A stretch of DNA of 46,474 nt from Ministeria vibrans ATCC 50519. Taxonomy: Eukaryota; Protista; Filasterea. Below are positions 1,343 through 20,604 of this stretch, one piece after another. Both the position numbers and the translations under genes were made by a program. Every line of letters begins with the position of its first letter. Position 1 is the stretch's first letter. The stretch covers positions 1 to 46,474 of the forward strand of contig CALSCP010002846.1 of assembly GCA_943704425.1 (NCBI GenBank). Direction: 5' to 3'. The notes under the pieces were generated by a model that saw only the letters and a list, made by a program, of their open reading frames with translations, made no database searches and was not told the DNA's origin.

Positions 1343-2644
1343 CTATCTTCCGATCATATTCGATCCGCACACTCTTAACGTCTGTCCCACCATGCGTGCT
1401 CGAGGGTCGGCAAGAAAGGCCACGGCCGAGGCAATGTCGACGGGAAAGCCGCCCTGCTGGAGGGCACTGGCGCGACGAGCCATCTCGCGTGGTACCTTCG
1501 CAACACTCTGTGTCATTTGAGTCTCAATAAACCCCGGTGCAATGCAGTTGTGCACCACTCCGTGTTGGCGCAAGTGCACCTCCTCTCGCGCATACCCCGT
1601 CAGGCCCGCCTTGGCAAACGAATAGTTGATCTGCCCGGCATTGCCCGCCAGCCCCACAATCGACGACATGTGCACAGCACGCGAACCGCGCTGCAACAGC
1701 CCCGTTCCCGTCAGACAGTCCGTCAGTGCACGCGGCACATCATAGTCAAGATGCACCACCCGTCGAAACTCGTCCGAGGTCATTTTGGCACAGAGACGAT
1801 CAATGACAATGCCCGCATTGTTCACAAGCACATCCACTCGCGCCCCCTCCAAATGCGACTTGGTCACTCGCGCAATCTCCTCGACCGCACCCTCGTCGCT
1901 CAGATCCACAGCACACTCCACAACCGTCGCTGCGTCGCCAATCTCTTGCGCGAGCGTCGCCAGTGCCTCCGCTTGTGACGGATGGTCCACCACCACCAAC
2001 TCAGTAATGCCTTCGAGCACCAACTGAAGCGCCACACTGCGACCAATGCCCTGCGCTGCGCCCGTCACCACCGCACTCCGTGTCGTCGTCGTCGTCTGAG
2101 CCTCGCCGGTCGAAGTGCATTGCACGACCTGGCCACTAATGAAGGCACTGTGCGGCGACAACAAGAACCGCTCGGCAAAAGTTGGCGCCGGCTCAGTCGC
2201 CTCGTCGCTGATCACAAGGTTCGCAGTGGCGCCAAAGCGCCCTGCCTCCTTAGCAAGCGTACGCACAAAGCCTTCGACTGCAGCCGCGTGACTTGCGGTC
2301 GCTGTGGCCGACGGGAGATGGCACACAAAGCGCAACGGAACACCGTCACCGCCAGCATTCGCCTTGATCGCCGCCAACCACGACTGCGCCTGGGCGAAAA
2401 GCTTCTCAGGTGACTCTACCCCAGCTACGCGTCGTGTGACGTCACTCTCAACCCAAGGCGTGGACGCAAGCGACGAGACGCGCTCTCCGACAGCGCGACA
2501 CAGCTCCACCGGCTTCGACAGCCCTGCCACCGAACCCACGACTTTGTCGGCCACCGCGCCGAGGCCAGTCGCATCTCGTGCTGCCTGTGCATCCAAGAAC
2601 TGCCGTCGCAGCGCATTGGATACTCGTTGAATGGAGGCGTTCAT
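1343..2644 (-). CDS. 3-oxoacyl-reductase SDR of the high-molecular-weight FabG4 type, intronless
   Basis: SDR motifs TGAAQGIG, NNAG and SS...NYSFAK (YxxxK). The extra N-terminal domain has EGFVRTLAKEAGRFGATANLV and FLLSPHSAFISGQV, characteristic of FabG4 (Rv0242c-like) proteins. First ATG at 2644. Confidence 0.85.
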   Translation of the reverse strand: MNASIQRVSNALRRQFLDAQAARDATGLGAVADKVVGSVAGLSKPVELCRAVGERVSSLASTPWVESDVTRRVAGVESPEKLFAQAQSWLAAIKANAGGDGVPLRFVCHLPSATATASHAAAVEGFVRTLAKEAGRFGATANLVISDEATEPAPTFAERFLLSPHSAFISGQVVQCTSTGEAQTTTTTRSAVVTGAAQGIGRSVALQLVLEGITELVVVDHPSQAEALATLAQEIGDAATVVECAVDLSDEGAVEEIARVTKSHLEGARVDVLVNNAGIVIDRLCAKMTSDEFRRVVHLDYDVPRALTDCLTGTGLLQRGSRAVHMSSIVGLAGNAGQINYSFAKAGLTGYAREEVHLRQHGVVHNCIAPGFIETQMTQSVAKVPREMARRASALQQGGFPVDIASAVAFLADPRARMVGQTLRVCGSNMIGR

Positions 2645-2829
2645 CAAAAATAACTCTCGTTTCCCTATGAGGCTATGACAGATCAAAATTTCAAAACTCA
2701 AAACTCAAGTGACAACTGATAAGTACTCCATACACCTTCCTGTCTTTCTTGCAGTCGTTGCGCGGTATTAGCACCCTCTCCCCCCCACCTCGCCTCCTTG
2801 TCGCGCTGCGCGCCTCATCCGCTGCTGCA

Positions 2830-5800
2830 ATGCCGATGCGACGACTGGCTCTGGTGCTGATGCTGTGTTTGCTGACCCCGTCGGAAATGGCCCCTGCGTC
2901 GCCGTGTACCGCCACCAGCTCCTGTCAGACTGGATCGACGTGTGTAGGCGGGTATCGGCAGACGCAGTTCTGGAACGGCGCGTCTGTCGCAGATGGCGCT
3001 CTCGGCTCCTTTTCCTTCTACGGCGCACCGCACAGCCCGTCCGCCGGCTCTCTCACCGTCACGACCAGCATCCTGTTCCCGTCGGACGCCTTCCTGCATG
3101 TCGTCATCAGCAGGACGCAGTTCCAAGTCTCGTTTGTGCCGCAGTCTCTGGACTCTTGTCTGGTCCAAAGCGAAACGGTCCATTTCAACACCCAAGAACT
3201 CAGCGCCATGGTCGCTGACGATGCCACCGTCTTCGTTGAGGTACTCACCACTGCCAACCACCACATCACCACACCGACACTCGCTGATTGTCCTTTTCTG
3301 CCTTGTTTAACTCCCAATGCTTTTTTTTTTTTTGCATCTCTTATTATTCTTACTCTATTAATTTATCATCAGACTCTAAATCATTATGACGTTCTTCTTT
3401 TATTTTTCTCAATCTTAAATTAGGTGTATGTAAATGGTGTCACGGCTGTCTGTGGTGACGGAGCTTACATTGAGGTACGTTTGCACCCCCAAGTGAGCCG
3501 CTTAGTCTAAAACTCTCTCTTTGTAGGTGACACTCGCATTGGACACTCTCGATCAACATTACTGCGAGTGTCCCTCCGGCGTCTCGGGTCCTCACTGCGG
3601 TATTGCTCAGAATGAATGCGACAGCAGCAACATCACTTGCGCAAACGGCGGGCTTTGTCAAAGCCGCTTTGGCTCGGCCACTCTTGAAGTACTACTTCAA
3701 AATATCTCTTGCAACCAGACTCTCAACCCCTCTTTTAGCAATCGGGCGTAGACAGTTCCAACACTCTTGTATATACGTTTGGATCGACCTCTCTCTCGCA
3801 ATTCGAATTACGATCCGACATTGCAAACGGAACTCTGATTCTTGAAAGTACATCAAACACACTCTCTCGAAAACCCTCACTCACTCTCTTTTTGTTTCTC
3901 AGCAAATGGCGATTTCTTCAGCGTATCAGAATACGCATCAATCAATTCAAATGGCTTCAAAGTACCCAAAACGCCCACTCTGCACACACACATAAATAAG
4001 TTTTTCCTTTTTGTTTTAGAGCACTGCCTTTACTGCATCAAGTGCTTCCGACTGCTCCGTGCGCGTCGACCGGATCCCTTTGACTGAATTTCAAGTGCTT
4101 GACCTTCTCACGTCCTCTCTTTTTGCCGTCTTCACTTCCTCTGTCAGTTCTCAAACCTGCCCTTCAGCGACACTTAAAATCACTCTTGAAATCGAGACGC
4201 TCTCGCGCTCGTCTCCCTGCGTGTGCTCATCCGGCTTCACCGGTTTCGACTGCACCGACGAAAGCCGATGTGTGTCGGGCGTCAATGACTGTCTCAACGG
4301 TGCAACCTGTCAAACGGGGTACACTCAGTCGCAGGTCGTGTCCGAGCCCACCGGCGACCAATCGCCCTCCTTTATCTTTGATTCTCTTCCCCTGACCTTT
4401 ACGGGGGATGCTCTCATCACTGTCGCAACGGTACTGCATGATGAATCAATGGAATTCATTCTAACATACTTACACTCACTCGCTCTTGCATGCACCGTCA
4501 CACAACTTTAGAACGGTGACTTCTCATCCTCCTCGCAAGTCGCCTATGTCGCCGGTCGTGCTCTTTTTGCCACGAGCTACCCAGTCCAGACAGCCTGTCC
4601 CTACCAGACTGAGTCTTTCACAATGAGCAGTGACGAGTTTCGTCGCAGAATAGCCCCTTTCAGCAACAACATCATGTAAGGATACGTTTCCACTCACCTC
4701 ACTCACAGTTTTCCATTTCATCGCTTGTTGTACTTTTCTGTTACAACAAAAGTATGATATTTGTCCCTCACTCACAAAAATAATTTTCCTTTATATATAT
4801 AGTCTTCCTGTACTGTTTTCTTCGTCTGTCTCCATTAACAACTGCCAGGGAATCAGTGCTTTCTTCCAAGTGACCCTGTCGCTCAGTGGCAGCCTTGAAG
4901 ACCGCACCTGTCTCTGCCCCAGTCTGTACGACGGCGAGCTGTGCGATGTAACTATCAACGAGTGCGCCCTCTCTAACCCCTCTGTCTGTCTCAACGGTGG
5001 AACCTGCAATCCCCGGTATGCATCGAGTTATTTCCCTTTTGCGCTCTACCCCTTCCTCACACTTTCTTCTTTCGCTTAGTTATACGGACGTCACACATCA
5101 AATGGACAATGTCTATCATCCCACAACAAAAACCTTCTCCGCGTTCGGCACTGACATTTCCTATACCAACATCAAAAGCGCCAAAGTATCACAAATGGCA
5201 TGTTCTGTCCCGTCCAACAGTATCTCAATCATTCCATTCCTTTTAGCTGACTGTTGTCTCAAATGGTGATTTTGGATCTTCAAGTGAGTACATGTCAATG
5301 CTCATGCCCGGAGATATCACTGTATTCCGTTCTATTGCATCCGGTAAGTATTATTGTGTGTTGCGTTGACTTGCTCTCTTTTCACTCTAAACGTTTTTTT
5401 GTTTAGATTGTATTGTTCGCACGGAAACATTTGAGTTTCCCACGCAAACGGCGGCGCAACTTGTGTCGCTTTCGAGCTATGGTGTGCTTTTTTCAAGCAC
5501 AGTTTCCCTTTCAGCGTGCTCCGACCCTCTGGCAACATTTTCTCTTCGTGTCGAATCGACCACCATGGCACCCTGTACCTGCCCAACGGGATTCACTGGT
5601 GCATTGTGTGAGACCGACATTGACGAATGTAGCGCCTCCAACCCGTGTGTTATGCTCCACAATCGTGATTGTGTCAACCATCTGTCGCTCACGGGTGACT
5701 ATGTGGGACCTGTAGACTCTAGTCACGGTCCCTTTGACATCACGATACCCTTTCCCTCGCCCATCCAGTCGGATCAAGGCACTTGGTAAAAAAGAGTGAA

Positions 5801-8800
5801 AGAAAGAAGAAAAGAAAAAAAGTGCGCCACTTAAGCCCTTATGTTTTCTTATTAATTCAGGCTTATGACTGTCGTTGCTCGCTCCGACTTAAGCAGCACA
5901 AACGAGTTCCTTGCCATCTCCACCTCGTCGGGTTTCTCTCACGACTTTTTCACTACCATCACTCGCGTGGACTGCCTCGATTTTACCGAATCAGTTTCCC
6001 TCACTCCATCTCAGGTAAAATATCATCCAAGTAAAGTTGGCGCAATCTTGCGATTCATTTTTGTTTCAACCCTTTCGACTTCNNNNNNNNNNAAAAAAAA
6101 AAAAAAAAAAAAAAATAGTAATAAGAAAAAACCGATGCACACACGTTTTTTTCTAGGTCTCGTCTATGTTGACAACGTCGGGCTTTGTCTTTACTGTGAG
6201 CCCCTCTAGCGCAGTTGCATCTTTTTGTGACGATACATTTGTCAATATTACTCTCGAGCTTGTCGGCGGCGCCTATGTGTGCCCTTGCACTGCTGGCTTC
6301 TCAGGCTCATCCTGCGGCGGTGACGTTGATGAATGTGCCCTGGGCACAGCGCAGTGCTCTAACTCGCGCACTTGCAACAACGCATTCAACATGTCTCAGG
6401 TACATGGCCCCCCCGTGGTCGGCGCCCTCTACGAATACGAACTGCCTGTGCCATTTCCGTTGGGCGAGCCCCAGGGCAACTTCTATCTCAACGTCACAGC
6501 CCTGCTCAATTTTGCGCCTAAAAACAACCAAATCCTCGTGTCGAATAATGATGCACAACTGTTCGAGCTTCCCTTCCGATTCTTCTTTGGCGCATCTGCT
6601 TTGGACATTGAGTGTCGAACAGTCTCTCAAGTTTTTCCGCTCACCTACGACCAAGTGCTAAGTGTTACGCACAATGGTACCCAACCCGCCCGATTTAACA
6701 TCTCCACTCACGGGGAAAGGGGCACTATTGATCCGTTTGCGTGCACCGACGTGCCTGGCGTTGGTGCAACATTTATCAAATTGGGACTCGAAGTGGTCGC
6801 TGGCACGTACATTTGCGACTGTCCCTACCCGTACACGGGCGTCACGTGTGACACCCTTGTGGACGAGTGTGCCTCCTATCCATGCGTACACGGCCTTTGT
6901 ACCATGACTCCCGTCGGCTACCAATGTACCTGTTCATCGGGCGCCTCCGGCCCCACCTGCGCCGTCACCTCCGGAGCGTGCTCTGGGACACAACAGCCCT
7001 CAACACTGTGCGGCAGCCACGGCACTTGTCTGCCCACCTTCTACCAGAAGACGTACAGCGTCTCGTCATTCCTACCAGCTATCTACCCAATCTCTTTCTC
7101 TTTTAATGATGCCAGTCTCACTCCGTCTGCAGTCGTCTCGCTCATTGTCGAGCTCAGCAACGCCAATGTCGACGATATACGCATAATTGATTCTGCCTCC
7201 TACGTCCTCTCCTCTCACAATGTCTCCTTCACCGTCGGAAACTACTCTCAGACCCTCTTTGCAGCCGACGCCGGCTACTGTCTTGCCTCCAACCAACAGG
7301 GCGCCTCGATTCCAACCGACCAGTTCATTGCCAGTGGGAACAAAGTAATGCTTGACCTCTCCTCAGTACTTGCCTGTGGCCTCACCGATCCCAGCATCAC
7401 TGTCACTTTAAACGTCGCGAACGCTCACGCAACCCAGTGTGACTGTGACCCAGGGTAACACCAAGACAACACGCAAAGACACGAAATCGCTCTGAAACAA
7501 AAATAAAAACTCTTTTCTTTTCTTCAGGTACGCTGGAGCGAAATGTGACGAGGACTATGACGAGTGCAGTTCCTCGCCGTGTCCTACCACATTATCAACA
7601 CCGCGTGTGTGCACCGACTCGTTTACACAGACTGTGTTCCATGGAAACGCCTTCTATCCCAACGTTCAGTGGTTCAATTTTAGTGTGCCCGAGCCGTTTC
7701 CCTCAAGCGACAGCCTGTGGACCCTCACGGCCACGACCAATGTTGACCTTAATCTTGACTCGGAGTACATCCTGTTGCAGACGGAGTTCACTTCATTCCA
7801 TCTATTTGAATTGCCTCCTTTTGCTCCCGACTGTACCACAATCAATACGACGCTGTCTTTCTCTGGCGCCGACCTGCTCACCCTCAGCAACCAGGGCACT
7901 TCCGAAATCTCTATTCTCGCCTCGTATGTCAATGTCCAAGGCTTCTGTCCCAACAGTTATCTCAGTATGACTCTCTCCCTTGTCTCGCGTGGCTTTGTCT
8001 GCGCTTGTGTGCACCCCATGACCGGGTAGGTTGCACGACGATACTACTGATCCACTGACCTTCTATATTGCTTTGTTTCTTTTCTCTCCATCACGTTGTT
8101 TCCTTTCCATCACGTTGTTTCCTTTCCATCACGTTGTTTCCTCTCTATCACGTTGTTTCCTCTCTATCACGTTGTTTCCTCTCTATCACGTTGTTTCCTC
8201 TCTATTACGTTGCTTTCTCTCTATCACGCTGCTTCCTCTCTGTCACGCTGCTTCCTCTCTGTCACGCTGTTTCCTCTCCCTCCTCTTTCTCCTCCTGCTT
8301 TCTATTGTGGTTTAGACTGAATTGCACAACGGAAATAGACACATGTGCCTCGTCTCCGTGTCTCAATGGTGGGACATGCACGAATGTAGCCGGTAGCTAC
8401 ACATGCACGTGTCTTTTGGGGCTTACAGGCATCAACTGTGAAGTGGACGAACAAGAGTGCATCTCGTCCCCCTGCCAAAATGGTGCAAGTTGTACGGATC
8501 GCTATGGTCTGTTTGGCAATTCGGCGACATTGTTTCCTTCACAAGGCATTGCAACCATGTTGAATCTTTTCAATGCGCCTTTGACGTCGATTTCAGCAGG
8601 CGTCATTTTTGTGTCTGCCACAGGTTTCCGATTTCCGGAGAACAATAATTTCCCGACCTATATTCACATCGCCGCTCTAGACGTACCATCTATTTCGGGG
8701 GATCTCTTCAAGTACACTGGAAGTCCCAGGTGTGATGACGCTGACACCGCACAACTGTTCCTCAATGCCACCCAAGCACAACAGCTTCTGGCGGCCTTCA

Positions 8801-11800
8801 TTATCAATTTCCAAATTAGCCTTTTTTCTGTCTCAACTGGATCCTGCGACGCGCCGACAGTCACACTTTCCCTCTACGTCAGCGTCAACGAGTCTTTGTG
8901 TCACTGCGCGCCGGGATTCACTGGTGATGTGTGCGACATCTCAATCAACGAGTGTGCCTCGTCACCGTGTGCCAACGGTGCCAATTGCATCGACTCTAAC
9001 GGTCTGTTCACATGCGTGTGTCCTGCCGGGCGCACCGGTGCCCTTTGTGAGAGCGACGTTTCAGAGTGTGCTTCGCAACCCTGTGAAAATGGTGGTACCT
9101 GCATCGATTCGCTCACCCTTGACCATTTTCTGTGCGTGTGCCAGCTTGGATTCACCGGCATCGTTTGCGAAACTGACATCGACGAGTGTGTCTCGACTCC
9201 CTGCTTTAATGGCGCCACTTGCATTGACCAGGTCAATTCAGTTGTTTGTGTCTGTCTTTCGGGATTTGCCGGTGACTTTTGCACCACCAACATTGACGAT
9301 TGTGCCTTGCAACCGTGTGAAAATGGCGCCACGTGTATCGACGGAACTGGTAGTTTTGACTGTGTGTGTCTTGCCGGCTATACCGGCGTCTTGTGTGAGA
9401 CCGACGTTGACGACTGTGTTTCATCTCCCTGTCGCAATGGGGGTGTGTGTCGCGACGACAACAATCGCTTCTCGTGCACCTGTGTGCCTGGATTCTCTGG
9501 TCCCACTTGTGCGTTTGATCTCAACGAGTGTGACTCGTCCCCGTGCCTCAACGGTGGTGCTTGCAACAACCACGCCAATGGCTACTCGTGCGACTGTCCC
9601 GTCGGATTGAGCGGTGCTCAGTGCCAGAGTAATGTCAACGAGTGTGCCTCGGGACCTTGTGAGAATGGCGCTACTTGTGTCGACACCATTGCGACCTACT
9701 CGTGTGTGTGTCCTCGCGGTGTTACCGGCATTCAATGCGAATCCATCGTCGACGAGTGTGCCTCGTCTCCCTGTTGGAATGGTGCTACCTGTCTTGATTT
9801 TTCAGGCGCGTATATTTGCGCATGCCACGCCGGAACCACCGGGGAAAACTGCGAGTCTGACATTGACGAGGTACATCAAAAAAAAAAGTCTTTCTCTAAC
9901 CTCCTCATTATAGTGCTCTTCATTTCCTTGTGACAACGGTGGTACGTGTTCGACAGGCGCTATCTTTGGGGTGTTTTCATGTACCTGTCCCGATGGATAC
10001 AATGGCAGCCGCTGTGGAGTGGACGTCGACGAGTGTGCATCATCGCCATGCACCCATGGCGGCACTTGCATTGATCGCGTTGCGGGTTTTGTGTGTCAGT
10101 GTGCCCTTGGTTTTACCGGTGCTCAATGTCTAGTTGACATTGATGAGTGTGCCAGTAGTCCGTGTCTCAACGGCGCACTCTGCTCGACGCCCGCCGTCGA
10201 TGCCTTCCGTTGCGCTTGTCCAGCCGGTATCACGGGTGCCCAATGCCAAACCGACATTGACGAATGCGCCTCTAATCCCTGTGAATTCGGCTCGTGTCAA
10301 GACCTCAGTGCCACCTTCAAGTGTCTATGCGATCCTTTTTACACGGGTAAGACGTGTGACACGCAAATTGACGAGTGTGAATCGTCGCCGTGTGCAAATG
10401 GAGCCAGCTGCACGGACCAAGGTCGTGGATTCCTCTGCGAATGTACCAAAGGCTACACCAACGCACAGTGCCAGACAAACATTGACGAGTGTGAATCTTC
10501 ACCGTGTAAACACGGCGGAGTGTGTCATGATGCTGTGGATGCCTTTGTGTGTGAGTGCCCTCAGGGTTTTACTGGTAGTCAGTGTGAAGAGGACGTGGAC
10601 GAGTGTGCGTCGCAACCGTGCGGCGCAGGCATTGCCGTCTCGTGCGTGGATTTGCCCGGCGACTTCCAATGCATCTGTGGGCAGGGTGTGGCGTCGGGCG
10701 GTCACGACTGTGACGAGGAGTGTCTGTCGCATCCCTGTGCCAATGGTGGCACATGTACCGATCAGCTGTTGGGTTTTAATTGCACCTGCGCTGCCGGCTT
10801 TTTTGGTCATGACTGCTCGGCCGACACCGACGAGTGTGCATCGTGTCCGTGTGTCAATGCCGCGACTTGTGACGATATCCCCAACGGCTTTGTGTGTCAG
10901 TGTCTTGCCGGTTTTACAGGAACCCATTGTCAGAGTGATATCGACGAGTGTGCCTCGGATCCCTGCGAGCACGGGGGCACATGTGTCAACGCAGTCGTGC
11001 CAGGCATATTTGCGTGTCACTGCCCGACCGGTTTCAGTGGCGTTGTATGCGACGTGAACGTGAACGATTGTGAGTCAAGTCCCTGTTATCATGGCGGCTC
11101 ATGCTTGGATGGCGTGGACAGCTACCAGTGTGACTGTGCCGTGGGGTTTACCGGCGCTTCGTGCTCGACCGATATTGACGAGTGTGTTTCGTCGCCCTGT
11201 GAAAATGGCGCCGAGTGTCTTGACCAGTCGGGAGTCTTTACGTGTCTCTGTCCGACCGGTTTCACCGACGCTCGATGTGCCATCAACATTGACGACTGTG
11301 CAGCGCCTCCTCTCCTGGACCAAGCGACTGTGTGTCACCATGGAGGCACGTGCAGTGACGGTGTGGCAAGTTTTGTCTGTGACTGTCCAGCCGGTTACAC
11401 AGGCACGACGTGTGCGACGGAAATTGACGAGTGTTCTTCTGCTCCCTGTGAGCATGGCGACTGCACCGACTTGTTTGATGGGTTCCATTGCTTATGTCCA
11501 CCAGGGATTACGGGCGCCACCTGTGCCGACGACATTGATGAGTGTGTGTCGTCACCATGTGCCTTTGGGTCAACGTGTGTCAACCAAATCAACATGGGTG
11601 CCACGTGCCTGTGTCCGTGTGGACGCACGGGTGTTGCGTGCGACGTAGACATTGACGAGTGCCAGTCGGGTCCGTGTGAAAATGGAGCGACGTGCACCGA
11701 TGATGTATGCAATATACAGTGCATGTGTGCCGCCGGCTTTGTCGGCTCACGGTGTCAGCAGGAAATCAATGAATGTGTCTCGTCGCCCTGCCAGAACGCC

Positions 11801-14800
11801 GCCACGTGTTTGGACCTTGTCAATTCGTTTGACTGTGTCTGTGCCTCCGGGTTCACTGGCATCCTGTGCGACGTGGACATCGATGAGTGTCTCTCGTCAC
11901 CTTGTGCCGCTGCCGGCGCCTGTTCCGATGCTATTGATGGGTTCACGTGCGCCTGCCGTATTGGCTTCACTGGCACTCGCTGCGAGACCAACATTGACGA
12001 GTGTGCCTCGTCGCCGTGTCTCAATAATGGCATGTGTAGTGATGGCGTCGACAGTTTCTTGTGTGCGTGTCCATATTATTTTGCCGGTACACACTGTGAG
12101 TCTGCCGTAGACGATTGTTACTATACCGGCTGCCTGAACGGCGCGTCGTGTGTGGACTCATTTGATGCAGATGGGCCACAATGCATCTGCCCTGCGGGAT
12201 TCACGGGAGCCAAGTGTGAGACGGATATATTCGAGTGCGCCTCGGGACCCTGTGGTACCCATGGTGTCTGTCTCGATCTGGAAAACGCCTTCCGTTGCGT
12301 GTGCAATCCGGGATTTACGGGCACGCACTGTGAATCGGACATTGACGAGTGTGCTTCGTCGCCGTGCGCTCATATGGGAACGTGTACCGCTGCCACTGGT
12401 GCATCAAACTTGGGGTTTGTCTGCACTTGCGTGACAGGCTACACGGGGACACGCTGCGAGACAAACGTTGACGATTGCGATGCGAATTGGTGTGCTAATG
12501 GCGGTACCTGTGTGGACCAAGTTGATGGTTACCACTGCGCCTGTGCCGCCGGTTACACGGGAAGTGGGTGCGAGCAGAACGTTGATGAGTGTGCTTCGTC
12601 GCCGTGTGGATCCAACGGAATGTGTGTGGATGCAGTGCATAGCTACACGTGTCAGTGCAATATTGGCTTCACTGGTGAGGTGTGTGAGACTAATTTGGAT
12701 CAATGTGCATCGTCGCCCTGCCACCAGCACGGCACTTGTCTGAGCATATTGAGTGGACCTGCTGGGTTTCTGTGCTCGTGCAACAATGGCTACACGGGAC
12801 CACAGTGTGAGACAGACATTGATGACTGCTTGTCGTCGCCCTGTGTCAATGATGGCGAGTGTCTCGATGGACTCAACGAATTCACCTGCCTTTGCCTGGC
12901 TTCGTTTACGGGCGCCACCTGCGAGGTTTCGCTTGACCATTGTGAATCGAGTCCCTGTGTGAATGGTGCCTCATGCAGCACTGCCGTGACTGGTTTTGTC
13001 TGCGCGTGTGCTTCAGGCTTTTTTGGCAATCGCTGCGAGGCGGACACGGACGAGTGTCGCAGCAGTCCCTGTGCGAATGGTGCCACTTGTCAGGATATTG
13101 TTTCCGGTTTTACCTGTGACTGCCCTGCCTCCTTCACTGGCCTGACCTGTGACGAAGTACTAGTGGACCAGTGTGCCTCATCGCCCTGTGCCAATGGTGC
13201 GTCGTGCCATGCCACATCCAATCGCTTTTTCTGCACCTGTGCGTCTGGTTTTACGGGTGTCTCGTGTTTGGAAACCATCAACGAATGTGCCTCTGAGCCT
13301 TGCCTTAATGGTGGAACGTGCCGCGACGACTTGGTTGCGTTTGTGTGCGTCTGCCCCGCCGGGTACACTGGCGCTGTGTGTGCGACTGACGTGGACGAGT
13401 GTGAGTCTGAGCCGTGTCTCAATGGTGGGACGTGTCACGATTGGGTTAGTAGTTTCTCGTGCGTGTGTGCGGTTGGATATACTGGTGAGCAGTGCGAGAC
13501 AGCCGGCATTGCGTTTGCGTGTGCGTCTTCGCCCTGTCATAATGGCGCGACGTGCAGTGAGAGTGTCAGCAGTCTGCAATTTTATTTGTGTTCGTGTCCA
13601 TCTGGCTTTCGGGGTATTGACTGCGCCGAGAACTTTGAGGAGTGTACATCGTCGCCGTGCCAGAATGGCGGAGTGTGTCAGGATGGCACGGATGGGTTCA
13701 CGTGTGTGTGCAGTGCGCCATTCACGGGACGTCTCTGTGACGCTACGTCAGGCCTGTGTTCATCAATGCACTGTCTTAATGGGGGCACCTGTGAGGAGTT
13801 GGGGCAACAGCAGCTCGCCTACCAGTGTCGCTGTGTCCAAGGCTTCCTTGGCTCCCACTGCTCTGTTCCCATTGCCCTTGTGCCCACTACTATTGGTGCT
13901 GTTGTCAATCCGACACCGATTGAAACGGGCGACGGCGAGTCGCACTTGCGAACGCTCAGCGTGCAGCAGAGCACAGTTGTTGTAGAGGCTGCGGCGCAGA
14001 CCACTGCTGCGGAAGTGGTACTTGGGACGATTTCAACGGTGGTGGTTGAGACGACTGGTGTGGCGAAGATCACGGTTGTTAGTGCGGTGGTTGAAACGAC
14101 AGCTGCTGGTGCAGAGTTTGTTGAGACAACTATTGCTGGCGCAGATTTAGTTGAGACGACTGCTGCCTGTGTAGCGGCTGTTGAGACGACTGTTGTTGGC
14201 GCAGTGGCGGTTGAGACAAGTGATGCTGGTGTAGTGGCCGCTGAGACGACTGCTATTGGTGCAGAGGCCGCTGAGACGACTGATTTTGGTGCAGAGGCTG
14301 TCGAGACGACAGCTGTTGAAGCAGTGGCTGATGAGACGACTGTTGTTGGTGCAAAGACGACCGGTGTTTTTGCATTTGCCGCTAAGACGAGTGCTGCTAA
14401 AGCAGTGGCTGTTGAGACGACTGTTGTTGGAGCAGTGGCTGCTGAGACGACAGTTGTTGAAGCCGTATCTATTGAGACGACTGTTGTTGGTGCAGTGGCT
14501 CCTGAGACGAGTACTGCCGGTGTAGTGGCCGTTGAGACGACTACTGCCGGTGTAGTGGCTGCTGAGACGACTGCTGCCGGTGTAGTGGCAGCTGAGACGA
14601 CTGTTGTTGGTGCAGTGGCTGTTGAGACGACAGTTGTTGAAGCAGTATCTATTGAAACGACTGTTGTTGGTGCAGTGGCTGCTGAGACGAGTGCTGCCGG
14701 TGTAGTGGCCGTTGAGACGACTGTTGAGACGACAGCTGCCGGTGCAGCGGCTGTTGAGACGACTGTTGTTGGTGCAGTGGCTGTTGAGACGACAGCTGTT

Positions 14801-17800
14801 GAAGCAGTATCTATTGAGACGACTGTTGTTGGTGTAGTGGCTGCTGAGACGACTGATGCCGGTGTAATGGCTGCTGAGACGACTGATGCCGGTGTAATGG
14901 CTGCTGAGACGACTGTTTTTGAAGCATTGGCCGTTGAGACGACTGTTGTTGGTGCAGTGGCTGTTGAGACGACTGCTTTTGGTGTAGTGGCTGCTGAAAC
15001 GACTGCTGTCGGTGTAGTGGCTGCTGAGACGACTGTTGTTGGTGCAGTGGCTGTTGAGACGACTGTTGTTGGTGTAATGGCTGTTGAGACGACTGCTGCC
15101 GGTGTAGTTGCTGCTGAGACGACTGCTGCCGGTGTAGTGGCTGTTGAGACGACTGTTGTTGGTGCAGTGGCTGTTGAGACGACTGTTGTTGGTGTAATGG
15201 CTGTTGAGACGACTGCTGTCGGTGTAGTGGCTGTTGAGACGACTGCTGCCGGTGCAGTGGCTGCTGAGACGACTGCTGCCGGTGTAGTGGCTGTTGAGAC
15301 GACTGTTGTTGGTGCAGTGGCCGTTGAGACGACTGTTGTTGGTGCAGTGGCTGTTGAGACGACTGCTGCCGGTGCAGTGGCTGCTGAGACGACTGCTGCC
15401 GGTGTAGTGGCTGTTGAGACGACTGTTGTTGGTGCAGTGGCTGTTGAGACGACTGTTGTTGGTGCAGTGGCTGTTGAGACGACTGCTGCCGGTGTAGTGG
15501 CTGTTGAGACGACTGTTGTTGGTGTAGTGGCCGTTGAGACGACTGCTGCCGGTGTAGTGGCTGTTGAGACGACTGCTGCCGGTGTAGTGGCAGCTGAGAC
15601 GACTGTTGTTGGTGCGGTGGCTGCTGAGACGACTGCTGCCGGAGCAGTATCTATTGAAACGACTGTTGTTGGTGCAGTGGCTGCTGAGACGACAGCTGCC
15701 GGTGTAGTGGCTGTTGAGACGACTATTGTTGGTGCGGTGGCTGCTGAGACGACTGATGCCGGTGTAATGGCTGCTGAGACGACTGCTGCCGGTGTAGTGG
15801 CTGTTGAGACGACTATTGTTGGTGCGGTGGCTGCTGAGACGACTGATGCCGGTGTAATGGCTGCTGAGACGACTGATGCCGGTGTAATGGCTGCTGAGAC
15901 GACTGTTTTTGAAGCATTGGCCGTTGAGACGACTGTTGTTGGTGCAGTGGCTGTTGAGACGACTGCNNNNNNNNNNNNNNNNNNNNNNNNNNNNNNNNNN
16001 NNNNNNNNNNNNNNNNNNNNNNNNNNNNNNNNNNNNNNNNNNNNNNNNNNNNNNNNNNNNNNNTAATGGCTGCTGAGACGACTGATGCCGGTGTAATGGC
16101 TGCTGAGACGACTGTTTTTGAAGCATTGGCCGTTGAGACGACTGTTGTTGGTGCAGTGGCTGTTGAGACGACTGTTGTTGGTGTAGTGGCCGTTGAGACG
16201 ACTGTTGTTGGTGTAATGGCTGTTGAGACGACTGCTGCCGGTGCAGTGGCTGCTAAGACGACTGCTGCCGGTGTAGTGGCTGTTGAGACGACTATTGTTG
16301 GTGCGGTGGCTGTTGAGACGACTGCTGCCGGTGTAGTTGCTGCTGAGACGACTGATGCCGGTGTAGTGGCTGTTGAGACGACTGCTGCCGGTGTAGTGGC
16401 TGCTGAGACGACTGTTGTTGGTGCAGTGGCTGTTGAGACGACTGTTGTTGGTGTAGTGGCCGTTGAGACGACTGTTGTTGGTGTAACGGCTGTTGAGACG
16501 ACTGTTGTTGGTGTAGTGGCTGTTGAGACGACTGCTGCCGGTGCAGTGGCTGTTGAGACGACTGCTGCCGGTGCAGTGGCTGTTGAGACGACTGCTGCCG
16601 GTGTAGTGGCTGCTGAGACGACTGCTGCCGGAGCAGTATCTATTGAAACGACTGTTGTTGGTGCAGTGGCTGCTGAGACGACAGCTGCCGGTGTAGTGGC
16701 TGCTGAGACGACTGCTGCCGGAGCAGTATCTATTGAAACGACTGTTGTTGGTGCAGTGGCTGCTGAAACGACAGCTGCCGGAGCAGTATCTATTGAAACG
16801 ACTGTTGTTGGTGCAGTGGCTGTTGAGACGACAGCTGTTGAAGCAGTATTTATTGAGACGACTGCTGCCGGTGTAGTGGCTGCTGAGACGACTGCTGTCC
16901 GTGTAGTGGCTGTTGCGACGACTGTTGCCGGTGCATTGGCTGCTGAGACGACCATTGGTGCAGCGGCTGTTGAGACGACAGTTGTTGGTGCGAAGGTAGC
17001 TCAGACAACCGTTGCTAATGCAGCGGCTGCTGTTACGACCGCCACACCTGTTGAGCCTCAGACAACTTCTGCAGCGGTTCCTGTCCCGCAGACAACACTC
17101 TCTACCGAGACGACTATCGTTGCCCCCGATGCTGCGTCGACCTCCGCAAGTGCCCCGCTCAACTGCGACTCATCCCCCTGCCAATCGGGCGCTTCGTGTG
17201 TGAGTAAGGTGAACGACTTTACGTGCATCTGCCTCAAAGGGTTCACCGGCACACTCTGCGAGACGGACATTGACGATTGTGTCAACTTTCCGTGTGTGGG
17301 TGGTGGCACATGTGTGGACGCCGTTCTTGGATTCACGTGCACCTGCGCGGCCGGACGCACCGGCAATCAGTGCGAGACGCTCATTGATGAGTGTGCGTCA
17401 TCGCCATGTTTCAATGGAGCGAAGTGCATCGACGGCCCTGCCTCGTTTGAGTGTGTTTGTGTCCCAGGCTACACGGGCGCCACTTGTGCCGTCAATATGG
17501 ACGAGTGCGCGTCAGCGCCGTGTTTGAACAACGGTATCTGCGTTGACGGAATCAACGCCTTTACGTGTACGTGTAACACGACCTTCTATGGACGACGGTG
17601 TGAGCTGCTGCAGGACAATTGTGCTGGCGAGACGTGCAGTGGACGTGGAACGTGCATCTCAGACTCGAGTGTGTCTTTTGTGTGCGACTGTGAGCCGCTG
17701 TACACAGGCGAGCGCTGCGAAATGACCCTGTGCGACTCGAGTCCATGTGCCAATGGCGGCTCTTGCTCCACCACAACCGTCTCGTCTGATGGCTCGCCCC

Positions 17801-19255
17801 TCTGCTCATGCCCCCCCGCCTACAGTGGCGTCTCGTGTGAGGTCTCGCTGTGCGGTGTCTCTCAAGGATCGCATGCGCTCACCGTGTCCACCACACCACT
17901 GCGCTTCAACATTGTACCATCCGTGTTCACTGTCGTTTTCCCGTCTTCCTCCGTCCCACCGCTGCCCTTTTCCTTCTCTACCAGCAGCTTTGTCAGTGGT
18001 GATGCGTGTGATTCGACCGCCTTTGGTGAGCTTCCGTCTACCGTCATGCTGTCGAGTCTGTTTGAGCTGACGGGCAGCGCGACGGGCAACTTTCCGGGTC
18101 GTGGGGTTTTTGTTGAATTCTCAATGGGCAGTGCGTTCACGTCGGACGCAACTATTCTGTACAAGTCGAGTGCGTCTGACACAACATGGGAAACGGCCGA
18201 GAACATTGAGCGGGACGCGGTGACGGGCCGTGTGACGGGCTGGATGCGCCACTTCTCATTTGTCGGGGTGTTTTCGGTGACGCAGACGATTGGTGTGACG
18301 GGCCAGGACAGCGGCGGTGGCGGATCGAGCATGGTGCCCATCATTGCTGCCGTTGTGGGGATTGTGCTTGTCGTTGCAATCGTGGCGGTGGCCGTGGTGG
18401 TGTACCGCCGCCGCAAGGGCCGAGATAGTGGCACGCATAGCATGCGGTGGATGCCGAACAAGCCGAAGAAGGCGAAGAAGAGCAAGAACTCGATGGGCGC
18501 ACCGGGCAGCGACAATATGTTTGCGTTGAGTGTGGGGCCGTCGTCTCTTGCGTCGTATGAGGAGTCTTTTGAAATGCAACCGACTGGCATGATGAATTTC
18601 GTCGAAGGGACTGTGCAGGCGACACAGAGTCTCTTTGGCATCAACACGACCCCGCTCAATCCATCCTATGGTAGTGTCACGAGCGGTGCAGTACCTGCAC
18701 TACATCAACAACAGCCCACTGGTCTTCTGCTCAAGTCTAGCTATACTGGCTCAAGTAGCAGTAAGGGTCCAGCGCTGTCGGGTCCCGTCTACGAGACCAT
18801 CCACGACGGCGCTGCCACACCCGCCTACGAGACCATCCCGTACCCAATCGCCGAACTCACGGGCGCTTCCTATGTGTCAACATCAGACACACTCCAGAGC
18901 AACCAATCGTTTTCGAGCAACGTCTATGTCTCCAAGCAGCACTCCACGCTCTCCCAACAACAGGGCCTTGTGCCGCCCCCACCGCTGCCCACCGCTCGCG
19001 ACACCATGGTCACCCCTGTCCCTGCGCCTCGCCCTCCCAAGCGTCCCTCTGGCGACGGTGCCGCCCCTGTGCCCGCATCCCGTCCCGAGCGACCCGATCG
19101 AAAGCGCATCTCCATGTACGCGTACATTGAGCATGTCCCCGAAAATGACGCTCCCGATGTTGTTATTGAAGCCGCAGCAGCGGCAGCGCCACGTACCGGT
19201 GCGGCAAGGGTCCTCACCATTGGTGATTCTTCTTCTTCTTCTTCTTCTTCTTCTT

Positions 19256-19308
<53 letters not shown>

Positions 19309-20604
19309 CCGCCAACCCTAACATCAACGCCCGCCCCCAATGCGAACTACGACGTGCTCCCGGCCATCCGTCCGAAGCCACAGGGTCCAGTGTACCTGAC
19401 TCTGAAGGGCGCTGGCTCACACAGCTCCACTATTGCGCGCGCCAACGAGCTTCCTCTTGTGGACTACGAGGGCGAAGTGCGCCCCGACCGCATCAGCCTC
19501 ATTCCTAATGATTTGGACGGCTCAACGCAGGACCTGGGACGCGGCAACTTTGGCATTGTGTCGCGAGGCATGTTTGTGACGGCCGCCAAGGGCACGCCTA
19601 CACAGGTTGCGGTGAAGCACCTGGGCGCAGACGCAGATGAGGAGACGCGCACGTCCTTCCTCAACGAGATTCGCATGTACGAGCGACTGCGCCACCCGCA
19701 CATTACTGCCGTGCTCGCCAAGACGGTCGCGTCGCCCGACGCCTGTGAGTGGCGCCTTGCTCTTGAGCTCGCCAAGTACGACTTGCGCACCTTCCTGACC
19801 AATCGCTCGCACACTCTCTCCTTCGACGCCCGCATCCTCCTGTGCACCCACGTCTTTGCTGCCGGTAGCTTCCTTGCGTCGCAGCGTGTCGTCCATCGTG
19901 ACATTGCCCCGCGCAACTTTCTTATCTTTGCATCGCCGCTCGACCCGTCCGGCCGCACTCTCGTCATTAAACTCGCTGACTTTGGGCTCGCCCGTGAGTG
20001 TCTTGAGCGCGTTCCAGACTACCCCAACACGCCCGTCTACCTTGAACGCGAGCGCCTTCATCTTCCCCCTTGCTCTGCTCCCGAGACCATGGAGCGCGGG
20101 CGTGCCATGGAGCGTAGTGACGTGTTTGCTGTGGGTGTCACTGTAAGACTTATATTTTTGTCTTTGACTTTGTTAAAACTACAATAATAATATTATTATG
20201 ACTGTATCAATATACTGACTTGACCTGTGTTTCTCTTTCTTTATTGTGTTTAGTTGTGGGAAATCTGGAATGGGGCGTCGCTGGACAGTGACGCGCGGTT
20301 TGAGCAGTTCCCTGGGCCGTACTATTTGTGGCTGCGCGAACGCACAGGACTGCCCGACATTGACAACTGTCCACCTGTGATGTAAGTGAAAACAATTCTT
20401 GTGGTGTGTGATTGCGACTGACATTCACACATGCAATCTACTTCGTTTGTCATTAGAATGGCGCTGATCAATTGGTGTGTGCTTGACGATCCAATGCGAC
20501 GCCCGACCTTTGCGGACCTCACACAGGCGCTGTTGGATGAGCAACGCGCGCCCGGAAGCAGTGTTGTCAACAATATGCTTCTCCCGTCCGCCACCGATTT
20601 GTAG
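2830..20604 (+). CDS. Giant EGF-repeat single-pass receptor tyrosine kinase, about 5,400 aa, about 18 exons
   Basis: Signal peptide MPMRRLALVLMLCLL; about 59 EGF-like units; 10-aa repeat stalk; ZU5-like domain; TM helix at 18331-18405 followed by RRRK. Kinase motifs GRGNFG, VAVK, HRDIAPRN, KLADFGLAR, APE, SDVF, LWEI and RRPTF. GT-AG introns keep the frame (e.g. 3241-3423, 3475-3526, 3689-3738, 9871-9913, 20143-20253, 20382-20456). Ends ...PSATDL*. The frame break at the N-gap 15967-16063 is treated as an assembly artefact. Confidence 0.9.
2905..8934 (+). other. Region encoding nine split-EGF modules (domain inserted between EGF C3 and C4) plus two intact EGFs
   Basis: Each module reads C-x4-10-C-x5-9-C [110-150 aa insert] C-x-C-x8-C after splicing. 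The inserts share a GD(F/L)xxxxE(Y/F)-like motif, a Cys pair and a terminal TLxL strand. Confidence 0.8.
8085..8277 (+). repeat. Intronic minisatellite with an 18-20 nt unit (ctctctatcacgttgtttcc)
   Basis: About 10 tandem degenerate copies inside RTK intron 8026-8315. Confidence 0.85.
8935..13861 (+). repeat. Array of 42 tandem EGF-like domains, mostly calcium-binding (DIDEC...) type
   Basis: Manual count of 6-Cys units with D-I/V-D/N-E-C starts and C-x-C-x2-G-F/Y-T-G-x2-C ends. Confidence 0.9.
14040..16990 (+). repeat. Coding 30-nt minisatellite encoding about 95 copies of a 10-aa unit (V/A)ETT(V/A)(V/A)G(V/A)VA; interrupted by N-gap 15967-16063
   Basis: The unit gctgttgagacgactgttgttggtgcagtg repeats in frame within the RTK ectodomain. 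Confidence 0.95.
17850..18276 (+). other. ZU5-like juxtamembrane domain ending in HFS
   Basis: ...MLSSLFELTGSATGNFPGRGVFVEF...ILYKS...TWE...VTGWMRHFSFVGVF follows the ZU5 pattern (S-x-x-x-E, F-x2-3-V, W, terminal HFS). HFS codons are at 18250-18258. Confidence 0.65.
19228..19307 (+). repeat. (TCT)n then (GCA)n trinucleotide tracts encoding polySer/polyAla in the RTK cytoplasmic region
   Basis: Seen directly, in frame. Confidence 0.9.

What the first reader, a model, noticed from the sequence alone, without database searches (positions are those of the whole stretch)
2830..20604. Giant Notch-like receptor tyrosine kinase: candidate long-range contact- or force-sensing system
Seen: signal peptide, 9 split-EGF heads, 42 calcium-binding EGFs, a stalk of about 1,000 aa, 6 EGFs, a ZU5-like domain, TM, pTyr/PxxP region, tyrosine kinase and PDZ ligand, about 5,400 aa in all. 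Established: unicellular holozoans have lineage-specific RTKs with varied ectodomains, and Notch couples about 36 EGFs to a proteolytic switch but has no kinase. Inference: this protein combines a Notch-sized EGF rod, a spacer and a potential cleavage switch with kinase output. It could act as a receptor reaching beyond the glycocalyx for prey, substrate or cell-cell recognition.
Basis: partly seen in the sequence, partly recalled or inferred. Interest (0 to 1): 0.8.

Follow-up and report, generated by a model that had tools for sequence, protein, structure and literature searches.

The report
Giant EGF-rod receptor kinase with ZU5 switch
One very large gene of an animal-relative protist encodes a roughly 5,300-residue cell-surface receptor kinase, and just outside the membrane it carries a domain of the self-cleaving ZU5/GAIN type, a combination not described for receptor tyrosine kinases.

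Summary
On the + strand from ATG 2830 to stop 20604 I find these parts:
- a signal peptide;
- nine EGF domains, each split by an unknown insert of about 120 aa;
- two plain EGFs;
- 42 contiguous EGFs;
- a 10-aa E-T-T repeat stalk of at least 930 aa;
- six EGFs;
- a 164-aa juxtamembrane domain;
- one transmembrane helix;
- a Tyr/PxxP-rich tail;
- a three-exon tyrosine-kinase-type domain;
- a C-terminal T-D-L.

Both gaps are harmless. Gap 6083-6092 lies in a GT-AG intron. Gap 15967-16063 lies inside one 30-nt tandem array whose two edges overlap by 112 nt (1 mismatch), in frame.

The juxtamembrane domain is a real ZU5/GAIN-B fold. A profile of its paralogs matches ankyrin ZU5 at E 1e-11, and the fold match scores Z about 10. 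An H-F-S motif sits in the turn before its last strand.

The gene is not unique in its genome. At least 14 kinase genes, five 7TM receptors and some non-kinase membrane proteins carry the same module just before the membrane. No ortholog turned up in public proteins; the best kinase match is 32% identical.

"Notch-like" applies only to the EGF rod. Cleavage and force sensing are inference.

The parts
2830..2904 (+). Start codon and signal-peptide-like N-terminus (about 25 aa)
   Evidence: First ATG of the open frame 2713-3420. It has a basic n-region, a Leu-rich core and a small-residue end. The neighbouring gene on the other strand ends at 2701.
2905..8934 (+). Nine 'split EGF' modules plus two ordinary EGFs (6856-6960, 8329-8439), broken by about 16 short introns. 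Each module is an EGF N-half (Cys1-3), an insert of about 120 aa with two invariant Cys, and an EGF C-half (Cys4-6).
   Evidence: EGF half-hits. The 27-module profile A3 maps all nine modules exon by exon. The same profile hits single solved EGFs with two separate pieces. Every junction can be bridged in frame by a GT-AG intron.
6015..6156 (+). Intron holding assembly gap 6083-6092, next to a poly-A run
   Evidence: Donor GTAAAA at 6015, acceptor CTAG ending at 6156, phase 0. Profile positions run 106 then 104 across it.
8935..13861 (+). Rod of 42 contiguous EGF domains, with one short intron at about 9871-9913
   Evidence: Pfam EGF at E 4.6e-174 and 2.5e-64. A local EGF profile counts 8+1+33 domains. 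Of 44 parsed EGFs, 35 carry C-x-S-x-P-C, 25 carry the O-fucose consensus, and 25 carry the strict Ca consensus.
13862..17160 (+). Stalk: degenerate linker, then a tandem array of 10-aa E-T-T units (30-nt period, 14090-16991), then a T/P/S/A-rich linker
   Evidence: TRF finds period 30/60/90 and about 95 copies. There are 92 units, 83 of 91 spacings are exactly 10 aa, and the composition is A27 V26 T20 E11 G9 % with no Pro.
15967..16063 (+). Assembly gap inside the stalk array; only the copy number is uncertain
   Evidence: The 112 nt on either side are the same sequence with 1 mismatch, in frame. The two flanks are 84-90% identical to each other, against about 70% to the only other such array in the genome.
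17161..17838 (+). Six membrane-proximal EGF domains
17839..18330 (+). Extracellular juxtamembrane ZU5/GAIN-B-type beta-sandwich. H-F-S (18250-18258) sits in the turn before the last strand.
   Evidence: 25 copies in the genome. Profile A2 matches ankyrin ZU5 at E 1.1e-11. The AF2 model has pLDDT 80.7. Foldseek and VIA-align match ZU5 at Z 10.1-10.6 and GAIN at Z 9.7-10.1.
18331..18405 (+). Single transmembrane helix followed by RRRKGR
   Evidence: A 25-residue hydrophobic run read directly.
18406..19527 (+). Cytoplasmic docking region: 13 Tyr including two YETI (18790-18801, 18826-18837), NPSY (18658-18669), PxxP stretches (18973-19047), and a poly-Ser/poly-Ala tract (19228-19308)
   Evidence: Read directly. 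No Pfam domain.
19528..20604 (+). Kinase domain in three exons (19528-20142, 20254-20380, 20457-20601) plus stop. It has GRGNFG, VAVK, HRDIAPRN, DFGLAR and SAPE. The C-terminus T-D-L fits a class I PDZ ligand.
   Evidence: PF07714 scores 107.7 bits against 76 for PF00069. All 60 best solved relatives are tyrosine kinases. Splice sites GTAAGA/TTTAG and GTAAGT/TTAG. Exon 1 is 52% identical to the intronless paralog on contig C1425, and exon 3 aligns to its C-terminus.

Best explanation
This is one gene for a type I membrane receptor kinase of about 5,300 residues.

Shown:
- The domain order, from the outer tip to the tail, is: nine split-EGF display modules, a 42-EGF rod, an E-T-T repeat stalk, six EGFs, a ZU5/GAIN-B-type sandwich carrying H-F-S, one transmembrane helix, a tail with SH2/PTB/SH3-type docking motifs, a kinase with all catalytic residues intact and a tyrosine-kinase-type catalytic loop, and a PDZ-type C-terminus.

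Inferred:
- The ZU5-type domain cuts its own chain between Phe and Ser, as PIDD and Nup98 do at H-F/S and adhesion GPCRs do at H-L/T.
- The huge outer part then stays held to the membrane-kinase part only by the last beta-strand.
- The distal modules bind a surface, prey or another cell.
- Clustering, or pull on the rod that loosens or removes the outer part, switches the kinase on. The kinase then phosphorylates its own tail and recruits adaptors.

The protein is one member of a lineage-specific family that uses this module in front of kinases, 7TM receptors and plain membrane anchors.
For: One gene:
- Open frames of 2,017 and 1,373 codons meet inside one tandem array, with overlapping, in-frame edges.
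- A paralog on contig C1664 has the E-T-T stalk, the ZU5-type domain with H-F-S, the TM helix and an HRDLAARN kinase in one uninterrupted frame.
- The 5' exons all join in frame.
- Flanking genes bound the locus.

ZU5-type module:
-.
- H is invariant and S is at least 90% conserved across 23 paralogs.
- The motif lies between the last two strands.
- PIDD cleaves at H-F/S right after its ZU5 domains, and the fragments stay associated (PMC3210808).
- In five 7tm_2 receptors the same module sits directly before TM1, where GAIN sits in adhesion GPCRs.

Kinase.

Binding-type ectodomain: the split-EGF module is a conserved eight-Cys family found in at least eight other genes.
Against: - There is no RNA or protein evidence for the transcript, the cleavage, or any ligand.
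- Pfam's own ZU5 model does not hit any single member, even at E up to 10.
- Animal ZU5 domains are cytoplasmic and many do not cleave.
- The kinase is very divergent: at most 33% identical to any public kinase, with plant receptor kinases among the hits. It also lacks the Trp of the tyrosine-kinase P+1 loop.
- The structure of the stalk, and therefore the reach of the receptor, is unknown.
- The fold of the split-EGF insert was not predicted.
Confidence: 0.6

Rival explanations
1. This is the same single gene and the same receptor kinase, but the ZU5-type domain does not cleave. It is a rigid spacer or a protein-binding sandwich. Signalling is ordinary ligand-induced clustering, with no role for force.
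For: Ankyrin, UNC5 and ZO-1 ZU5 domains are binding modules, and the profile match is to ankyrin. Three paralogs have H-L-S or H-L-T instead of H-F-S. Nothing here tests cleavage.
Against: H-F-S is near-invariant in a family that otherwise averages 30% column identity. The motif lies exactly between the last two strands. In five 7TM receptors the module occupies the GAIN position.
Confidence: 0.25
2. The model fuses two genes, or is a scaffolding error. On this reading, a secreted EGF/stalk protein on the left of the 15967-16063 gap was joined to a separate stalked receptor kinase on the right.
For: The join lies in a long repeat, where assemblers fail. A second E-T-T array exists elsewhere in the genome. 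There is no transcript evidence.
Against: The edges overlap by 112 nt with 1 mismatch, in frame. The flanks are 84-90% identical to each other but only about 70% identical to the other array. There is no stop codon, start context or terminator on either side within the array.
Confidence: 0.07
3. The protein is mainly an adhesion or surface-coat protein. Its kinase domain is not a tyrosine kinase: it is either Ser/Thr-specific or only a scaffold.
For: The catalytic loop HRDIAPRN is a hybrid. The P+1 loop lacks the Trp typical of tyrosine kinases. Named hits include plant Ser/Thr receptor kinases.
Against: All catalytic residues are present. The Ala and Arg of the tyrosine-kinase catalytic loop are kept. 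The DVF..G..LWE and RPTF motifs are of tyrosine-kinase type. The 60 best solved relatives are all tyrosine kinases. The tail carries YETI and NPSY docking motifs.
Confidence: 0.08

Closest known systems
Lineage-specific receptor tyrosine kinases of unicellular holozoans (choanoflagellate, filasterean, ichthyosporean and corallochytrean RTK families; PMC4342544, PMC8662651)
   Same: It is a type I receptor with a tyrosine-kinase-type domain and a lineage-specific, repeat-rich ectodomain that includes EGF domains. The family is expanded in one genome and has no animal ortholog.
   Different: No described family has a ZU5/GAIN-type juxtamembrane domain, split-EGF modules or an E-T-T stalk. The kinase is at most 33% identical to any public kinase.
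Notch
   Same: It has a long run of EGF domains (42 against about 36), many with the O-glucose and O-fucose consensus sites. A proteolysis-prone module sits between the rod and the membrane.
   Different: It has no LNR/NRR, no RAM and no ANK domain. The juxtamembrane module has a different fold. The output is a kinase, not a released transcription co-activator. It is not a Notch homolog.
Adhesion GPCRs and polycystin-1 (GAIN domain with GPS autoproteolysis)
   Same: A beta-sandwich of matching fold (Z 9.7-10.1) sits directly before the first TM helix. Its H-[FL]-[ST] motif lies between the last two strands, and a hydrophobic strand follows the motif.
   Different: There is no GAIN subdomain A and no GPS cysteines. 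Sequence similarity is to ZU5, not to GAIN. Here the membrane part is a single helix plus a kinase.
ZU5 domains of ankyrin, UNC5, ZO-1, PIDD and the NLRP1/CARD8 FIIND
   Same: It shares the fold and a profile-level sequence match. H-F-S is the PIDD/Nup98 self-cleavage motif (PMC3210808).
   Different: Those domains are cytoplasmic and are usually followed by UPA and death domains. This one is extracellular and is followed by a TM helix. Pfam's ZU5 model does not reach it.
Laminin LE domain with an inserted L4 (laminin IV) domain (from my own knowledge, not tested here)
   Same: An EGF-type domain serves as a scaffold, with a whole globular domain inserted in one of its loops.
   Different: The insert here has no detectable relative. 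The host is a Notch-type EGF, not a laminin-type EGF.
Juxtamembrane SEA domain of choanoflagellate Sema-FN1 and of mucins (PMC8011033)
   Same: It offers a proposed self-cleaving 'breaking point' near the membrane in a large surface protein of a unicellular holozoan.
   Different: The fold and the motif are different, and those proteins have no kinase.

Membership tests
Receptor tyrosine kinase (generic) | Signal peptide, a single TM helix, and the kinase on the cytoplasmic side | tested here: met
   Read directly from the translation. RRRKGR follows the TM helix.
Receptor tyrosine kinase (generic) | Kinase domain of the tyrosine-kinase group with intact catalytic residues | tested here: met
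   PF07714 scores above PF00069. All top solved relatives are tyrosine kinases. GxGxxG, VAVK, HRD..A.RN and DFG are present. The P+1 loop is atypical.
Receptor tyrosine kinase (generic) | Phosphorylates tyrosine | not testable with these tools
   This needs an enzyme assay.
Notch | LNR/NRR module, and RAM plus ankyrin repeats in the intracellular domain | tested here: not met
   A Pfam scan of both large frames finds only EGF-type, Decapeptide and kinase families.
Notch | Long EGF array with O-glucose and O-fucose consensus sites | tested here: met
   There are 42 EGFs. Of 44 parsed, 35 carry C-x-S-x-P-C and 25 carry C2-x4-[ST]-C3. The GT90 and O-FucT families are present in the genome.
ZU5 domain | ZU5 beta-sandwich fold | tested here: met
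   The model has pLDDT 80.7. It matches ankyrin ZU5 at Z 10.1-10.6 and rmsd 2.7 A over 124-126 residues. Unrelated rows score Z 6.4 or less.
ZU5 domain | Sequence match to the family | tested here: inconclusive
   The profile of 23 paralogs hits ankyrin ZU5 at E 1.1e-11, and UNC5B and ZO-1 at E 0.6-0.8. Pfam PF00791 hits no single member.
ZU5 domain | Cytoplasmic location, followed by UPA and death domains | tested here: not met
   The domain lies between a signal-peptide-led ectodomain and the TM helix, and no UPA or DD is found.
Self-cleaving ZU5/GAIN/Nup98 class | H-[FL]-[ST] motif in the turn before the last strand | tested here: met
   H138-F139-S140 lies between strands 131-136 and 141-146. 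H is invariant and S is at least 90% conserved.
Self-cleaving ZU5/GAIN/Nup98 class | The chain is actually cleaved | not testable with these tools
   This needs expression of the wild type and the Ser-to-Ala mutant.
GAIN domain | Helical subdomain A and a GPS motif with conserved Cys and Trp | tested here: not met
   An EGF domain directly precedes the sandwich. Pfam GPS is absent from this gene, although it is present further out in the 7TM paralogs.
Calcium-binding EGF | [DN]-x-[DN]-[EQ] before Cys1 plus the beta-hydroxylation consensus | tested here: inconclusive
   The strict N-terminal consensus is met in 25 of 44 parsed EGFs and the hydroxylation consensus in 29 of 44. Pfam EGF_CA scores E 2.7e-37.
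Mucin-type (PTS) stalk | Repeats rich in Pro, Thr and Ser | tested here: not met
   Thr is 20%, but there is no Pro and only 1% Ser. Ala plus Val make up 53%.

The most novel reading that the evidence does not exclude
This genome holds a class of two-subunit, self-cleaved receptor kinases. On this reading they are the kinase counterpart of adhesion GPCRs. An extracellular ZU5-type domain with H-F/S acts as a mechanical fuse or tethered-strand switch in front of kinases, 7TM receptors and plain anchors alike. It may represent the extracellular ancestor that links cytoplasmic ZU5 to GAIN.
Probability: 0.3. Interest if true: 0.85.

Novelty: new variant of a known kind. Interest (0 to 1): 0.62.

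Why it matters
Receptor tyrosine kinases of animal relatives are known to be numerous and lineage-specific, but how they sense anything is unknown.

Here a whole family places a domain of the self-cleaving ZU5/GAIN class between the ectodomain and the membrane. That is the same design principle as adhesion GPCRs, Notch and mucins, but with kinase output. If the cleavage is real, force- or shedding-gated kinase signalling existed in a unicellular relative of animals.

The same module sitting directly before 7TM receptors bears on the origin of the GAIN domain.

The split-EGF module is an unclassified domain nested in an EGF scaffold, and a candidate recognition unit.

Tried and rejected
- A single-sequence AlphaFold run of 17839-18330 gave pLDDT 41 and was useless. 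Only the paralog alignment gave a usable model.
- Pfam at E up to 10 found no ZU5, GAIN or any other family in the juxtamembrane domain members. The seven-sequence profile found nothing in the PDB.
- Pfam, a PDB profile search and the ESM Atlas found no relative of the split-EGF insert.
- The HMMER search of 1.84 billion representatives gave no self hit and no ortholog; the best was E 9e-24, over the kinase only. Its top hits are scattered across Achlya, Oscarella, Daphnia and Hartaetosiga.
- The search for homologous proteins on the ZU5 region gave nothing. On the paralog kinase it gave JAK at 27% identity and plant receptor kinases.
- The metagenome scan found no relative. Alignments A2 and A4 were too variable for that tool.
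- The Pfam 'Decapeptide' hit (49.6 bits, cut-off 45) falls below the cut-off in the genome search. I take it as compositional.
- Kinase exons 2 and 3 are too short for Pfam on their own. Exon 2 does not align to the paralog by BLAST beyond its first residues.
- My local seven-sequence profile missed the ZU5-type domain on contig C1664. The genome search had found it, and it is plain in the translation.
- The paper by Liao et al. 2014 on GAIN, ZU5 and Nup98 is not held.
All searches used single stop-free exons or frames by reference.


Full report
**What the window is.** The window is contig C2846 of a 29.7-Mb draft genome in 2,860 pieces. That genome holds at least 173 matches to the tyrosine-kinase family. 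The window is eukaryotic, with short GT-AG introns. An HSP90 gene of this genome finds animals as its best named relatives, and two unnamed JGI metagenome proteins at 95% local identity. The genome's own proteins are not in the public collections searched, since there was no self hit. I take the organism for an unsampled unicellular relative of animals, and I did not name it.

**The gaps, tested first.**
- Gap 6083-6092 lies in an intron. The exon ends at 6014 and is followed by GTAAAA. The next exon starts at 6157 after CTAG, in phase 0. The profile of the split-EGF module runs from position 106 on one side to position 104 on the other, so no coding sequence is missing.
- Gap 15967-16063 lies inside one tandem array of 30-nt units spanning 14090-16991. 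The open frame on the left (9914-15964, frame 2) and the one on the right (16066-20184, frame 1) read the same decapeptide.
- The last 112 nt before this gap equal the first 112 nt after it with one mismatch. Merging by that overlap keeps the frame. The apparent frame change is therefore an artefact of the estimated gap length.
- The two flanks are 84-90% identical to each other. The only other such array in the genome, on contig C1664, is about 70% identical.
- That C1664 array belongs to a paralog in which the stalk, the juxtamembrane domain, the TM helix and the kinase stand in one uninterrupted frame. So the right-hand architecture is real, independently of this scaffold.
- What remains unknown is the number of repeat units.

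**Anatomy.**
- *Start.* The first ATG at 2830 opens a signal-peptide-like sequence.
- *Split-EGF modules.* Nine modules follow. Each has an EGF N-half, an insert of about 120 aa, and an EGF C-half.
- *How the split was shown.* A profile of 27 such modules from this genome has eight invariant or near-invariant Cys, six from the EGF and two in the insert. It matches single solved EGF domains with its two ends only: positions 1-19 and 140-157 fall on residues 3-21 and 19-36 of one 40-residue EGF. That shows directly that one EGF is split.
- *The insert.* It has no match in Pfam, the PDB or the Atlas. The module recurs in at least eight other genes.
- *EGF rod.* Two plain EGFs and then 42 contiguous EGFs follow. 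Most carry the Notch-type O-glucose consensus. About 25 of the 44 I could parse carry the O-fucose consensus, and the same number carry the strict calcium consensus. Glycosyltransferase families GT90 and O-FucT exist in the genome, though that does not identify the specific enzymes.
- *Stalk.* It holds 92 readable units of E-T-T-[VA]-[VA]-G-[AV]-V-A-[VA]. It has no proline, so it is not a classical mucin. Its fold is unknown.
- *Proximal part.* Six more EGFs precede a 164-residue domain, a TM helix and a basic stop-transfer sequence.
- *Tail.* It has 13 tyrosines, including two YETI and one NPSY, two PxxP stretches, and a poly-Ser/poly-Ala tract.
- *Kinase.* It has three exons. Exon 1 is 52% identical to the intronless kinase of the paralog on contig C1425 and ends at the same residue where that paralog continues with L-W. 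Exon 3 aligns to the paralog's C-terminus.
- *End and size.* The protein ends in T-D-L. The mapped parts sum to about 5,290 residues.
Every search used a single stop-free exon or frame by reference.

**The juxtamembrane domain.**
- Alone it matched nothing and folded poorly.
- The genome holds 25 copies. In 14 of them a tyrosine-kinase match lies 0.5-2 kb downstream on the same strand, including this gene.
- Five copies sit directly before a 7tm_2 receptor domain, and three of those genes also carry a canonical GPS motif further out. Others sit before a TM helix with a short tail.
- Across 23 copies, mean column identity is 30%. Yet the His of H-F-S is invariant and the Ser is at least 90% conserved.
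- The profile matches the ZU5 domains of ankyrins (E 1.1e-11 to 3e-5), and weakly those of UNC5B and ZO-1.
- With the alignment, AlphaFold gives pLDDT 80.7.
- Foldseek ranks GAIN domains of adhesion GPCRs and ankyrin ZU5 first.
- VIA-align gives Z 10.1-10.6 for ZU5 (rmsd 2.7 A over 124-126 residues) and Z 9.7-10.1 for GAIN subdomain B. Unrelated sandwiches score Z 6.4 or less.
- H-F-S lies in the turn between the last two strands. This is the position of the GPS cut in GAIN.
- PIDD cleaves itself at H-F/S right after its ZU5 domains, and the pieces stay together (PMC3210808).
- The held library has no paper containing the phrase 'extracellular ZU5'.

**The kinase.** All catalytic residues are present. 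The catalytic loop keeps the Ala and Arg of tyrosine kinases. The alpha-F and alpha-I motifs are of tyrosine-kinase type, but the P+1 loop lacks the usual Trp. The 60 best solved relatives are all tyrosine kinases. No public kinase is more than about 33% identical.

**Reading.**
- The architecture is shown.
- The mechanism is inferred: self-cleavage at H-F/S, an outer subunit held by one strand, and activation by clustering or pull.
- The strongest indirect support is that the same module occupies the GAIN position in 7TM receptors of the same genome.
- The reach of the receptor cannot be given. It depends on whether the stalk is extended or a compact solenoid.

**Comparison with known kinds.** It works like a lineage-specific holozoan RTK (PMC4342544). 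It borrows the rod of Notch and the juxtamembrane logic of adhesion GPCRs, but it is a member of neither family. I file it as a new variant of a known kind.

**Earlier notes of this scan.** They cover the sub-features on this same window. I tested most of them independently, and they agree with what I found.

Noticed in passing
L006/L011 (G000:C2066:6473-9892), L015 (C2584), L022 (C1103), L025 and L028 (C572): Five secretin/adhesion-type 7TM receptors have the ZU5-type H-F-S domain directly before TM1. Their order is EGFs, ZU5-type domain, then 7tm_2, and three of them also carry a canonical GPS motif further out. This is an unusual replacement of the membrane-proximal GAIN domain.
   Followed up: partly
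L065+L066 (G000:C1664:53146-60104, minus strand): A paralogous giant receptor kinase has its own E-T-T decapeptide stalk of more than 1,000 aa, then the ZU5-type domain, a TM helix and a canonical HRDLAARN kinase in one frame. Its stalk also holds assembly gaps (58230-58325, 59329-59335).
   Followed up: partly
G000:C904:52000-64000, and also C1236, C1139, C1933, C807, C1542, C138 and C1961: The split-EGF module (eight conserved Cys, about 157 aa) occurs in tandem in several other genes. C904 alone has at least eight copies. The insert is an unclassified domain.
   Followed up: partly
window 42066-46474: A second EGF-rich gene on the + strand runs off the window end, with at least 17 EGF hits.
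   Followed up: no
window 1343-2701 (-): An intronless short-chain dehydrogenase (FabG-like; PF13561 at E 2e-35) is transcribed divergently and ends about 130 nt from the receptor's start codon.
   Followed up: no
L003 (G000:C1425) and L002 (G000:C16): Two paralogs also end in class I PDZ-type C-termini (S-L-L and S-N-L). A PDZ ligand may be a family trait.
   Followed up: no
window 8059-8316: The intron before the EGF at 8329 contains a tandem repeat of about 60 nt. It reads as an open frame but matches no module.
   Followed up: no
L058 (G000:C1392:44434-47004, minus strand): An HSP90 gene of this genome has two unnamed JGI metagenome proteins at 95% local identity (P0162, P0163). A close relative of this organism is therefore present in environmental data.
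   Followed up: no
window 19228-19308: A run of 10 Ser followed by 17 Ala lies in the cytoplasmic tail just before the kinase. It is a likely slippage-prone tract.
   Followed up: no
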